From contig NW_004797315.1 of assembly GCF_000002075.1 (NCBI RefSeq), positions 606,110-670,109 on the forward strand: a stretch of 64,000 bases of DNA, in the 5' to 3' direction. Shown here one piece after another: positions 21,966 through 56,111 of this stretch. This DNA comes from Aplysia californica (lineage: Eukaryota). The translations under genes were made by a program, and so were the position numbers. Positions within the stretch are counted from its first letter, which is position 1, and every line of letters begins with the position of its first letter. The notes beneath the pieces are model-generated. The model searched no databases. It had not been told where the DNA came from and saw nothing but the letters and a program-made list of their open reading frames with translations.

Positions 21966-24900
21966 ATGGTTTTCTTCAATCCGGACAACAATTGTGTGGA
22001 AGCATTTGATGTTTCAGGACATGTCGATGTGTTTGTTGATGGAGAGTTTTTCTCCAGGTGTAACTTTTCCAAGACTGTCAAGGTTCACTTGGTGTTGAAC
22101 TCAAATGATGGTTCTGTGAACAACCCTGATTCAAAAGTTTCTTCTGTTACAGATGGAAGCAGTTTTGAGAATGTACTTACTGGCCAAGCACCTTATCACA
22201 GCAAGGAAGTTTTGCCTGCCACCTCATTCCCCAATGTTGGTGATAGTCAATTCAAAGACAAAAGCCTTAGTATTAATGAGGATTCAAGTTTGGGAGTGGT
22301 TCCACAAATAGCCAGTGATGTCGGTGAAAGTTCCGGCATTGAGGGCTTTGCGGTCCCAAGTAATGAAGTGTCAGAGGTTCGTGACCTGAAGGTTTGTCAG
22401 GATGACTTGCAAGAAAGAGAGTCTTCACCTCTATCTGGAAATGAAGATGAGGATACTGGTAGCCCTCTAGTGAATTCAGAAGAGGAAAATGCTGGAAATC
22501 AAGACAGTTCAATAAATCAAAATGCTACTCTTCTTCCACAGAAATTTCCAGAGACAGAGGAATCTGCTTCTTACGAGTGTAAGTGTCATGCTTGTGGGAA
22601 AGGATTTGTCAGAAGAAGGCAGATGGTAGCACATGGCCGTAATCCTGACTGTGTGGTCAAGTGCTCAGTGTGTGATAAGAAGTTTTTGTCTGCTGCTATG
22701 TACTTTATCCATTTCTGTAAACGCCATCCCAACATTAACCCCAGGAGGGAGTTTAAGGAATACGTCAACATCACTAGACGTATCAAGTGGCGTGCTGATG
22801 GGGAGAGGGTCAAGTGTCCTTTGTGTCTCAAAATGGGGAAGAAGAGCAAGTTGTTGAGTCATCTGGAAGGTAATCACTTCAAAGATCTTTCCTACGTCTG
22901 CTGTGTTTGTGGCAAGTCTTTCTACAGTGAGAAACATTTGCATCAGCATTCCTTAACCCATGGTGTGGGTCGGCATCGTATGTCTGCTAGTTATGGTCCC
23001 TCAGATGGAAGAAGGAATTCTGCTGATAGGAACGAAACCTCGCTGCGGTTGCCAAAACAAGAATTGCAAGATGCTAGTGATGATGAGAGGGAAGAATCTG
23101 CAGTAGAACCCAGCTATGGGGTGGCAGAGTCAAGTTATGGCCAGGCTGCTCGCTCATCTGATGGGCTCACAGTTACCGTAACGGACCTTCTAAAAAATGT
23201 GGCTAGTGAAAATGAACAGGAAATGAGAGTCTCATATAATGTCGTTACGAAGGAGGAGGTTATTGAAGCTGCTTTTAACATTGGCGACAGTGTTGAACAG
23301 AACGAGTATTCCAAAGTACAAGACCAAGCAAATAATGACAGTTATAGCGCTGATACTTCTGGTGTGTCACATAGTCACAGTGCTGAAACAGAGCAAAGAA
23401 ATGTGCAGCAACCGGAAAATGAAAAACATACCCATAGCGCTGCTGTGTCTGGAAAGCATTTTAAAGTACACAAAGGGAATTCTTGTGAGTTTTGCGCCAA
23501 ATGGTTTCCCAACAGAAAAGCAAAGGAAGCTCACAGATTGAACCCAAACTGGAAGTTAAACTGCATCACTTGCAGTGCTGTTCACCCCTCAAAAGGATCA
23601 TTATTTGAACATTACTGCAGAGATCACCCCTCTGTGCAGGACTTAAAGGAGCAGTTTGGTGACCAGTTCTCCTTTGTAAATTTGAAATTGCTCAAGGGTC
23701 AAGGTGTCTGTCCACTTTGCATGGCACCAGTGAGTGAGGATGAATGTATCAAACATTTAGATCTAGTTCACTTTAATAACCAGCTGTATTTGTGTTGTGT
23801 GTGTGGACATGAGTTAAGCACAGAGTCTGCGTGGTTTGAACATTGTGAAAATGAGCATGGAAGATGCTCTGCTAGGGAAGGGAGACAACAGAATGTTCGT
23901 GTCACTGTATCTGGTAAAAGAGCGGAGAACTCTATTGCTGCTATTTCACACATGAAAGTAAATGGACCTAAGAGTAGTTTTGAATTTCAGTGTAAATATT
24001 GCAAGAAGACTTTTGGCAGTAGAGGTCAACTGTTAGCACATTCAAAAAGAAAAATGTTTACTAAGTTACCAAGCATTTCTTGTAAGCTGTGCAGGGTACG
24101 TTTTGTTGATCAAGCTTCCCTCATAGTACATGAAAAGAAAAAGCACAGCGACAACCCGGGCCCTGAATCGCTGGGCAGCAATCTGAATTACAACGATGTT
24201 GAATGTCCTGTTTGCAAGAAAGTGGTGAAGAATGCGACTTTGCTTTATCATATTAGACAGTTACACACTGGGGAAACGATGTTTGAGTGTTGTGTGTGTG
24301 GCCGAGGACTTCAATCTTTTGCAGAGTACAAAAAACACTGTGAAAAAAAGCACACAGAGGTTGAGAAACCAAGAAGCAAATTCAGATGTTCTCTGTGTCC
24401 TCATGTGTGTCACACCTTCAGTGAGTTTAATCGACATAAAGCAACGCACAAGAAAATTTGCCGCTTTTGTGGTGAGAAGTTTCCTTTGGTAAGACTTGCA
24501 GATCAGCACTATGAAGAAAAACATCCAGAAATGTTGTTCCCATGCAATCATTGTGACAAAAAATTTCCCACTCTGAAACATTTAGAGACCCATGAAAAAT
24601 ATGCTCGTTTTAATCGTTTGGAGCCTTGTCCGAAATGTGGCCTGATGTTGCACTGCCTGAAACGACATATGAAATCAGTGCACTCTGAATTTCAAGAAGC
24701 ACAGTGCAGCGTGTGTGGTAAAACGCTGAAGAGTGAGAAAAGTTTAGCACGTCACATGGAACGACATAAAAATGACCAGCTTGCCTGTCCCGAGTGCTCC
24801 AAAGTATTCAACCACCAAGGAGCTTTAGCCAGGCACCTTACACTGGTGCACTTTGCAGGGCAGGTCCACATGTGCCACGTGTGTGGGAAGAGTTTTGCCA

Positions 24901-56111: not shown

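What the first reader, a model, noticed from the sequence alone, without database searches (positions are those of the whole stretch)
21966..56111. Tandem poly-zinc-finger family with an unrecognised conserved N-terminal domain: candidate lineage-specific KRAB/ZAD analogue
Seen: all three proteins begin with the same ~47-aa segment (paralog 1 MVFFNPDNNCVEAFDVSGHVDVFVDGEFFSRCNFSKTVKVHLVLNS; paralog 2 MVHFDPVNNCVEAFDVSGHVDIFIDGEFFSRCNFSRTVKLHLMLNS; paralog 3 MFRFDPDKNCGEAFNVSGHIDVFIDGEFFSRSKFTRTVKIDLVLNS; nt 21966-22106, 34273-34413, 53493-53633). The following ~150 aa of acidic/Ser-rich linker is barely alignable with paralog 3. The alternating hydrophobic pattern suggests beta-strands, and I do not recognise it as KRAB, SCAN, BTB, ZAD (no C4) or SET. 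Established: vertebrate KRAB-ZNF and insect ZAD-ZNF families pair a small N-terminal effector with a fast-evolving finger array and expand in tandem clusters; KRAB-ZNFs silence TEs. Inference: this may be an equivalent molluscan effector/dimerisation module, and the cluster sits in very TE-dense DNA.
Basis: partly seen in the sequence, partly recalled or inferred. Interest (0 to 1): 0.8.

Follow-up and report, generated by a model that had tools for sequence, protein, structure and literature searches.

The report
New beta-strand module on sea-hare zinc-finger genes
Three neighbouring zinc-finger genes of the sea hare Aplysia californica do start with the same conserved 46-residue segment; it matches no described domain and marks at least ten zinc-finger genes in this genome, but nothing yet shows that it silences transposons.

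Summary
All three ORFs start with a near-identical 46-aa segment. Mean pairwise identity is 0.59-0.75 there and falls to about 0.15 in the linker. The assembly gaps lie between the genes and touch no CDS. RNA contigs and a GT-AG 5'UTR intron show that Met1 of paralog 1 is the true start.

- A fourth tandem paralog lies just past the window.
- Iterated profile searches of the same genome (Aplysia californica) found two more subfamilies on other contigs, giving at least 10 genes.
- All carry C2H2 fingers. Profile-profile probabilities are 80-96%, far above shuffled controls.
- Two metagenome fragments from other organisms also carry it.

Pfam, PDB sequences, Foldseek, VIA-align and the ESM Atlas give no match to any known domain. 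AlphaFold2 gives a moderate-confidence four-strand amphipathic beta-meander. It is net acidic and has no conserved Cys4.

My best reading is a new protein-protein contact module, either self-association or partner docking, that defines one zinc-finger family.

The KRAB/ZAD analogy is only partly supported:
- The family is small and old and is under purifying selection.
- The module is encoded on the same exon as the fingers.
- No repression or transposon link is shown.

The parts
11599..11628 (+). 3' end of the non-coding first exon of paralog 1, followed by a GTAATG donor
   Evidence: The 27 loose letters at the 5' end of RNA contig X1 match here with 1 mismatch and nowhere else in the window. 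The donor was read.
11629..21778 (+). 5'UTR intron of paralog 1 (GT...TTTCAG), about 10.15 kb
   Evidence: RNA-type runs X1 and X8 give no depth between 20582 and 21763, whereas DNA run X2 covers that stretch.
21779..21965 (+). 5'UTR part of exon 2 of paralog 1, with an in-frame stop at 21954
   Evidence: Organism B carries a 4-nt insertion behind 21954, which fits non-coding sequence.
21966..22103 (+). Conserved beta-strand module of paralog 1 (codons 1-46)
21966..25046 (+). Paralog 1 CDS, 1026 aa on a single exon, transcribed
28145..28995 (.). Assembly gap, intergenic between paralogs 1 and 2
34273..34410 (+). Conserved module of paralog 2 (codons 1-46). An in-frame ATG three codons upstream, at 34264, may be the real start.
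   Evidence: (P0002 is 1031 aa)
34273..37359 (+). Paralog 2 CDS, 1028 aa. The homologous TTTCAG acceptor ends at 34090.
49960..50200 (.). Assembly gap, intergenic, 3.3 kb upstream of paralog 3
53493..53630 (+). Conserved module of paralog 3 (codons 1-46), with an in-frame stop at 53472
53493..56111 (+). Paralog 3 CDS, 872 aa. It lacks the first four-finger block found in paralogs 1, 2 and 4.

Best explanation
The ~46-residue segment is a genuine, previously undescribed protein module. It is a small amphipathic beta-meander of four strands with an invariant Gly18, Asp25 and Phe34. It defines a family of at least ten C2H2 zinc-finger genes in Aplysia californica. The family has three subfamilies:
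- A: the four tandem genes here.
- B: four genes on three other contigs, where the module sits about 110 residues in, behind a basic extension encoded by exon 1.
- C: two genes on a further contig.

I infer that the module mediates protein-protein contact. Its strongly hydrophobic sheet face would be buried either against a second copy (homo- or hetero-oligomerisation among family members, as ZAD, BTB and SCAN do for other zinc-finger proteins) or against a cofactor. The finger arrays would supply diverged DNA specificity.

Shown: existence, conservation, distribution in this genome, gene structure, transcription of paralog 1, and absence of a match to known domains. Inferred: the fold details and the contact function.
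For: Conservation:
- Module identity is 0.59-0.75 against ~0.15 in the linker.
- dN is 0.09-0.22 in the module against 0.4-1.75 in the linker.
- Between paralog 4 and its metagenome orthologue P0121, the module is 84% identical and the whole aligned region 60%.

Spread in the genome:
- Own-genome HMM iterations found 9 copies and a tenth with a 1-aa insertion. All lie in open frames that carry C2H2 fingers.
- hhalign gives A-B 92.9% (P 3.6e-7), A-C 79.7% (P 1.5e-5) and B-C 95.6% (P 1e-8). The scores are 28-41, against at most 16.6 in 150 column shuffles.
- The B query hits paralog 4's N-terminus in return.
- Other zinc-finger genes with similar terminal fingers lack the module.

Structure:
- AF2 gives strands at 10-14, 18-24, 27-34 and 38-41, with pLDDT 83-91 over residues 21-40 and all five models at 67-72 (similar).
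- Hydrophobic and polar columns alternate strictly at 20/22/24, 32/34 and 38/40/42/44 across all subfamilies.
- Every copy is net acidic, -1 to -4. This argues against nucleic-acid binding and for a buried face.

Gene model: RNA contigs, the intron and an in-frame stop fix Met1.
Against:
- The models rest on only 6 and 11 sequences and mean pLDDT is about 71-72.
- A 40-residue sheet could instead pack against another part of the same protein.
- A-type relatives outside Aplysia are only two short metagenome fragments, so the depth of conservation is poorly known.
- Whether subfamily B shares a single origin with A and C, beyond the module itself, is not settled. By terminal-finger score alone, B is no closer to A than some module-less zinc-finger genes.
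Confidence: 0.5

Rival explanations
1. One reading: the module is a lineage-specific effector analogous to KRAB or FiNZ. It would recruit a corepressor so that the family silences transposable elements.
For: - The architecture is an N-terminal accessory module, then a disordered linker, then a C2H2 array, in a tandem cluster.
- Base-contacting finger positions are 30-41% identical between distant paralogs against 61-65% at other finger positions, so the paralogs differ in predicted specificity.
- The intergenic DNA is full of dispersed repeats, with 50,510 first-look candidates for 12.5 kb.
- Convergent cases exist. FiNZ in cyprinid fish is an example (bioRxiv 10.1101/2022.11.29.518450).
Against: - There are only about 10 genes.
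- The paralogs are old and the fingers are under purifying selection.
- No TGEKP-linked tandem array is present.
- The module is on the same exon as the fingers.
- No data on repression, cofactors or TE binding exist.
- The lower identity at contact positions is partly expected, because the invariant Cys, His and core residues inflate the comparison set.
Confidence: 0.12
2. The segment is simply the conserved N-terminal region of one gene family and has a role other than intermolecular contact. It might pack against a finger block of the same protein, act as a stability or degradation signal, or direct localisation.
For: - It is always found with the same kind of finger protein and never alone or with other domains in this genome.
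- It is encoded on the same exon as the fingers, so it has not moved as a shuffled module.
- It is small, about 40 ordered residues.
Against: - In subfamily B it is internal (residues ~113-155 of P0124), so it is not an N-end signal.
- The linker between the module and the first finger varies freely in length and sequence (60-500 aa). That is unusual for an intramolecular partner.
- A regular amphipathic four-strand pattern conserved at ~22% identity fits a folded unit better than a short linear motif.
Confidence: 0.25
3. The similarity of the 5' ends reflects gene conversion or a nucleotide-level element such as a translation or RNA signal, not selection on a protein domain.
For: - Synonymous difference pS is lower in the module (0.32-0.60) than in other regions (0.65-0.83) between distant paralogs.
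- Conversion does occur in the cluster: finger block 1 of paralogs 1 and 2 has dS 0.19 against 0.7-1.5 elsewhere.
Against: - The module is kept in subfamilies B and C on other contigs at ~22% identity with the same hydrophobic pattern, which only protein-level selection explains.
- dN/dS is 0.12-0.36.
- DNA conservation stops within a few bases upstream of the ATG.
- The module is rich in two-fold-degenerate codons (F, D, N, E, H, K, C). Their synonymous sites saturate near 0.5, so the low pS is partly an artefact (my inference).
Confidence: 0.03
4. It is a remote, unrecognised member of a known beta-sandwich or other described domain that the tools here missed.
For: - A local motif (S-G-H-V-D-V-F-V-D-G-E) recurs in soil-bacterial beta-sandwich-like proteins.
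- A weaker form recurs in the repeats of bacterial protein P0123.
- VIA-align's best rows are halves of Ig-like or sandwich domains.
Against: - The metagenome hits were retrieved by a pattern built from that very motif, and similarity does not extend past the hairpin.
- The module's 46 residues are about half the length of the sandwich domains that VIA-align matched (targets of 72-1129 residues).
- No Pfam hit at E<=10 for any of 11 copies.
- No PDB sequence hit.
Confidence: 0.05

Closest known systems
ZAD-ZNF proteins of arthropods (zinc-finger-associated domain, PF07776)
   Same: A small accessory module upstream of C2H2 fingers, found in lineage-restricted, partly clustered gene families. 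ZAD acts by dimerisation, which is the mechanism I favour here.
   Different: ZAD is built around four zinc-binding cysteines and is alpha/beta. This module has no conserved cysteine and is predicted to be all beta. No Pfam match. The family has about 10 genes. By my own knowledge, insects carry tens to hundreds of ZAD genes.
KRAB-ZNF proteins of tetrapods (PF01352)
   Same: An N-terminal module, a linker and a C2H2 array, in tandem clusters within repeat-rich DNA. Paralogs differ at the base-contacting positions.
   Different: KRAB is helical, sits on its own exons and recruits TRIM28. This module is predicted as beta strands, shares an exon with the fingers, has no Pfam match, belongs to an old and small family under purifying selection, and has no shown repressor role.
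FiNZ-ZNF proteins of cyprinid fish (Wells et al., bioRxiv 10.1101/2022.11.29.518450)
   Same: A short, lineage-specific N-terminal segment without similarity to known domains, recognised only by its conservation among zinc-finger paralogs.
   Different: FiNZ is 28 aa, Glu-rich, on a separate exon, and present in ~700 zebrafish genes with evidence of TE repression. This module is ~46 aa, has only one to three Glu, shares an exon with the fingers, occurs in ~10 genes, and has no functional data.
BTB/POZ-ZF and SCAN-ZF proteins
   Same: Oligomerisation modules placed N-terminal to C2H2 arrays. This is the functional analogy I favour.
   Different: Both are larger (~85-120 aa) and helical or alpha/beta. 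No Pfam match here. One module-less Aplysia zinc-finger gene examined for comparison has an N-terminus that I read, by eye only, as BTB-like.

Membership tests
C2H2 zinc-finger proteins | Multiple Cys2-His2 fingers matching PF00096 / PF13894 above the gathering score | tested here: met
   PF00096 at 76-95 bits and PF13894 at 87-105 bits in all three proteins. One search shows the same for a subfamily B member and a subfamily C member.
KRAB-ZNF | KRAB box (PF01352) at the N-terminus | tested here: not met
   No KRAB hit at E<=1 on the full proteins or at E<=10 on 11 isolated modules.
KRAB-ZNF | Helical module encoded on separate exon(s) upstream of the finger exon | tested here: not met
   The AF2 models are beta strands. 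The module and the fingers share one exon, and the only intron found is in the 5'UTR.
KRAB-ZNF | Binds the TRIM28/KAP1 corepressor | not testable with these tools
   Needs binding assays. The complex predictor was unavailable.
ZAD-ZNF | Four conserved zinc-coordinating cysteines (C4) and a PF07776 match | tested here: not met
   The 12-sequence alignment has no conserved Cys column. The invariant residues are G18, D25 and F34. No PF07776 hit.
SCAN, BTB/POZ, PR/SET zinc-finger families | Match to PF02023, PF00651 or PF21549/SET | tested here: not met
FiNZ-ZNF | 28-aa Glu-rich N-terminal segment on its own exon, in cyprinid fish | tested here: not met
   The definition was read. This module is ~46 aa with one to three Glu, shares an exon with the fingers, and is from a mollusc. 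No FiNZ sequence or model was available for direct comparison.
Any solved fold | Significant structural or sequence match to a PDB chain | tested here: not met

The most novel reading that the evidence does not exclude
The module is a new, heterobranch-mollusc-specific effector or oligomerisation domain of C2H2 zinc-finger proteins. It would be a convergent counterpart of KRAB, ZAD or FiNZ, through which a small family of sequence-specific DNA binders recruits silencing machinery or pairs DNA sites. It would be the first such accessory domain I know of for lophotrochozoan zinc-finger genes; two full-text paper searches found none.
Probability: 0.15. Interest if true: 0.7.

Novelty: new variant of a known kind. 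Interest (0 to 1): 0.42.

Why it matters
Lineage-specific accessory domains (KRAB, ZAD, SCAN, FiNZ) decide what large zinc-finger families do. Molluscs carry hundreds to thousands of C2H2 genes, yet I know of no accessory domain described for them, and two full-text searches found none. This small beta-strand module, conserved across three diverged subfamilies, is a concrete and cheap target. A 46-residue peptide can be expressed, tested for self-association and partners, and fused to a heterologous DNA-binding domain. The effect is limited for now: the family is small, and its range beyond Aplysia and its activity are unknown.

Tried and rejected
- A word-indexed search restricted to residues 1-50 found only the window's own proteins.
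- The whole-library HMMER search used the A-type profile. It returned the Aplysia paralogs, two metagenome fragments and one bacterial repeat protein, P0123. I treat P0123 as a chance hairpin-motif match summed over five repeats.
- The metagenome scan returned only soil-bacterial proteins. They were retrieved by the pattern itself and I rejected them as homologues.
- The ESM Atlas gave no usable feature hit. It gave only TM ~0.6 matches on 40-50 residues to unrelated families.
- Foldseek twice and VIA-align once gave nothing significant.
- The apparent low synonymous divergence of the module was considered as evidence for conversion or an RNA element. I set it aside because subfamilies B and C keep the module, and because two-fold codons bias pS.
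- I prepared a tree from the terminal fingers to test monophyly but did not build it. The finger register between subfamilies is ambiguous, with offsets of one finger, so a tree would not be trustworthy.
- The third gene of the C37 cluster (L062) shows no module within 8 kb. Whether this is loss, a far upstream exon or the gap inside its ORF is undecided.
- Five other Aplysia zinc-finger genes with similar terminal fingers were checked and lack the module.
- Two further paper searches found no prior description.

Full report
**What is in the window.** Three intact ORFs lie head to tail on the + strand: 21966-25046 (1026 aa), 34273-37359 (1028 aa) and 53493-56111 (872 aa). Pfam sees only C2H2-type finger families in them and nothing in the first ~200 residues. 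A whole-genome six-frame search places the window at contig C45:606110-670109 of a 927-Mb, 4332-contig assembly. It also finds a fourth paralog 9 kb past the window end (ORF read). That fourth protein is the database entry 'zinc finger protein 888 [Aplysia californica]', on a contig of the same length as C45. The genome is therefore Aplysia californica.

**Gaps.** The N runs at 28145-28995 and 49960-50200 lie between genes, and no CDS contains an N. The long 'ORFs' at 28055-29290 are read through Ns and are artefacts. The gaps leave gene spacing uncertain, and whatever lies inside them is unknown. They do not affect the three proteins.

**Is the conservation more than chance?**
- Mean pairwise identity among the four paralogs is 0.75 for columns 1-25 and 0.59 for columns 26-50.
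- It then drops to 0.07-0.33 for ~175 columns of Ser/acidic linker. The best finger blocks reach 0.6-0.72.
- dN is 0.09-0.22 in the module against 0.40-1.75 in the linker, and omega is 0.12-0.36.
- Between paralog 4 and an orthologous fragment from a marine metagenome (P0121), the module is 84% identical (my count from the alignment) against 60% over the aligned 253 residues.

**Gene model.**
- Two small runs (X1, X8) cover the locus only from 21776/7 onward. A DNA run (X2) covers the flank as well.
- X1's contig carries 27 extra 5' letters. These match window 11599-11625 and are followed, after CAG, by GTAATG.
- The acceptor is TTTCAG, ending at 21778. Paralog 1 therefore has a non-coding first exon, a 10.15-kb GT-AG intron, and its whole CDS on exon 2.
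- An in-frame stop at 21954 makes Met 21966 the start.
- Paralog 3 likewise has an in-frame stop at 53472.
- Paralog 2 is open back to its acceptor and has an extra ATG three codons upstream.
- The acceptor motif is conserved in all three. DNA similarity upstream of the ATG is otherwise poor.

**The module is wider than the cluster.**
- An HMM of six A-type copies gave, as its best non-family hit in the genome (E 0.3), a stretch inside another zinc-finger ORF on contig C867.
- That gene is P0124, 659 aa. With its paralog P0125 it keeps a strongly conserved ~45-aa segment at residues ~113-155, behind a basic extension from an upstream exon.
- Searching with that segment found four such genes (subfamily B). 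It also found, weakly, paralog 4's N-terminus in return, and a gene on contig C37.
- The C37 gene (976 aa) starts with the module at Met1. Its neighbour (696 aa) carries the module with a one-residue insertion.
- A combined HMM recovers nine copies at E 4e-27 to 7e-20, and then nothing better than E 2.35.
- Profile-profile comparison gives A-B 92.9%, A-C 79.7% and B-C 95.6%. Scores are 28-41 against a maximum of 16.6 in 150 column-shuffled controls.
- All ten copies lie in open frames that carry C2H2 fingers.
- A and C are also collinear over the last ~190 residues.
- B's tie to A outside the module is weaker.
- Other zinc-finger genes with similar last fingers lack the module, as does the third C37 gene.

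**Outside Aplysia.**
- The exhaustive HMMER search with the A-only profile found the Aplysia paralogs plus two metagenome fragments: P0121 (a JGI sample) and P0122 (an ENA sample, 42% identical).
- P0122 has a polypyrimidine-AG acceptor 38 nt before its ATG, the same layout as here.
- That profile did not report B members P0124 and P0125 at E<=0.001, although both are database proteins. Its silence in other molluscs is therefore not evidence of absence.

**Comparison with known domains.**

| Test | Result |
|---|---|
| Pfam, 11 isolated modules | no family at E<=10 other than two noise-level hits (E 0.18 and 0.27) on one module |
| PDB sequences | best E 1.9 |
| Foldseek | best E 1.2 and 2.7 |
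| ESM Atlas | no usable hit |

A hairpin motif shared with soil-bacterial proteins was retrieved by the search pattern itself and does not extend further.

**Shape.**
- AF2 with 11 sequences gives strands at 10-14, 18-24, 27-34 and 38-41. Mean pLDDT is 72, and 83-91 over residues 21-40. All five models score between 67 and 72. The 6-sequence run was similar.
- Across all subfamilies, columns 20/22/24, 32/34 and 38/40/42/44 are hydrophobic and alternate with polar columns.
- G18, D25 and F34 are invariant, and every copy is net acidic.
- From this I infer that a sheet of this size with one greasy face cannot stand alone. I also infer that it is unlikely to bind nucleic acid. It most likely buries that face against another copy or a partner.

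**The KRAB/ZAD analogy.**
- In favour: the architecture; lower identity at base-contacting positions (30-41%) than at other finger positions (61-65%); and repeat-rich surroundings (also one bin at ~400-fold depth).
- Against: only ~10 genes; old duplicates with purifying selection on the fingers; no TGEKP linkers; module and fingers on one exon.
- No functional data exist.
- FiNZ shows that such convergent domains occur, but in families of hundreds of genes and with knock-down evidence.

**Verdict.** The module is new to the libraries searched. Its role as a contact module is an inference. The transposon-silencing reading remains a minority possibility.

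Noticed in passing
window 22641-23045 vs 34942-35346 (approximate; finger block 1 of paralogs 1 and 2): Synonymous divergence between paralogs 1 and 2 is 0.19 in the first four-finger block, against 0.7-1.5 in the rest of the genes. 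This points to a recent gene-conversion tract inside an otherwise old duplicate pair.
   Followed up: partly
window 53493-56111 (paralog 3): Paralog 3 lacks the first four-finger block that paralogs 1, 2 and 4 carry. Only scattered residues align there.
   Followed up: no
window ~38170-38564, with an older inverted copy at ~44700-45090: A ~400-bp dispersed repeat is 92-95% identical to dozens of loci on other contigs. A ~74%-identical copy lies in opposite orientation 6.5 kb away. Further ~0.8-kb and ~1.1-kb repeat families lie at ~43795-44625 and ~48786-49900.
   Followed up: no
window 20385-20581: One 197-nt bin has summed contig depth of ~18,570 in DNA run X2, against ~45 for its neighbours. 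This is a very high-copy short repeat inside the 5'UTR intron of paralog 1.
   Followed up: no
L051 (G000:C587, subfamily B gene), just upstream of the module: A run of about 16 tandem copies of the pentapeptide P-A-V-T-S is inserted directly before the module in one subfamily B gene only.
   Followed up: no
L061:938-3868 (-), C-terminal third of the C37 gene: After its last finger this protein has a tail of degenerate ~10-residue repeats (H-T-L-[RQ]-P-V-D-[LI]-E-S type) that subfamilies A and B lack.
   Followed up: no
L062 (G000:C37:1928000-1935999): The third zinc-finger gene of the C37 cluster has an assembly gap inside its ORF (a run of X in translation). No module was detected within 8 kb.
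   Followed up: partly
L011, L015 and 26 other soil-metagenome loci: A family of bacterial or archaeal proteins shares an 11-residue hairpin motif (S-G-H-V-D-V-F-V-D-G-E) with the module, inside what looks like repeated beta-sandwich domains. It is probably convergence on a common strand-turn-strand motif.
   Followed up: partly
window 21954: RNA-type contigs labelled organism B (runs of 2025) match paralog 1 with few differences, most pieces at 99% or more. They carry a 4-nt TTGA insertion in the 5'UTR, 12 nt before the ATG.
   Followed up: no
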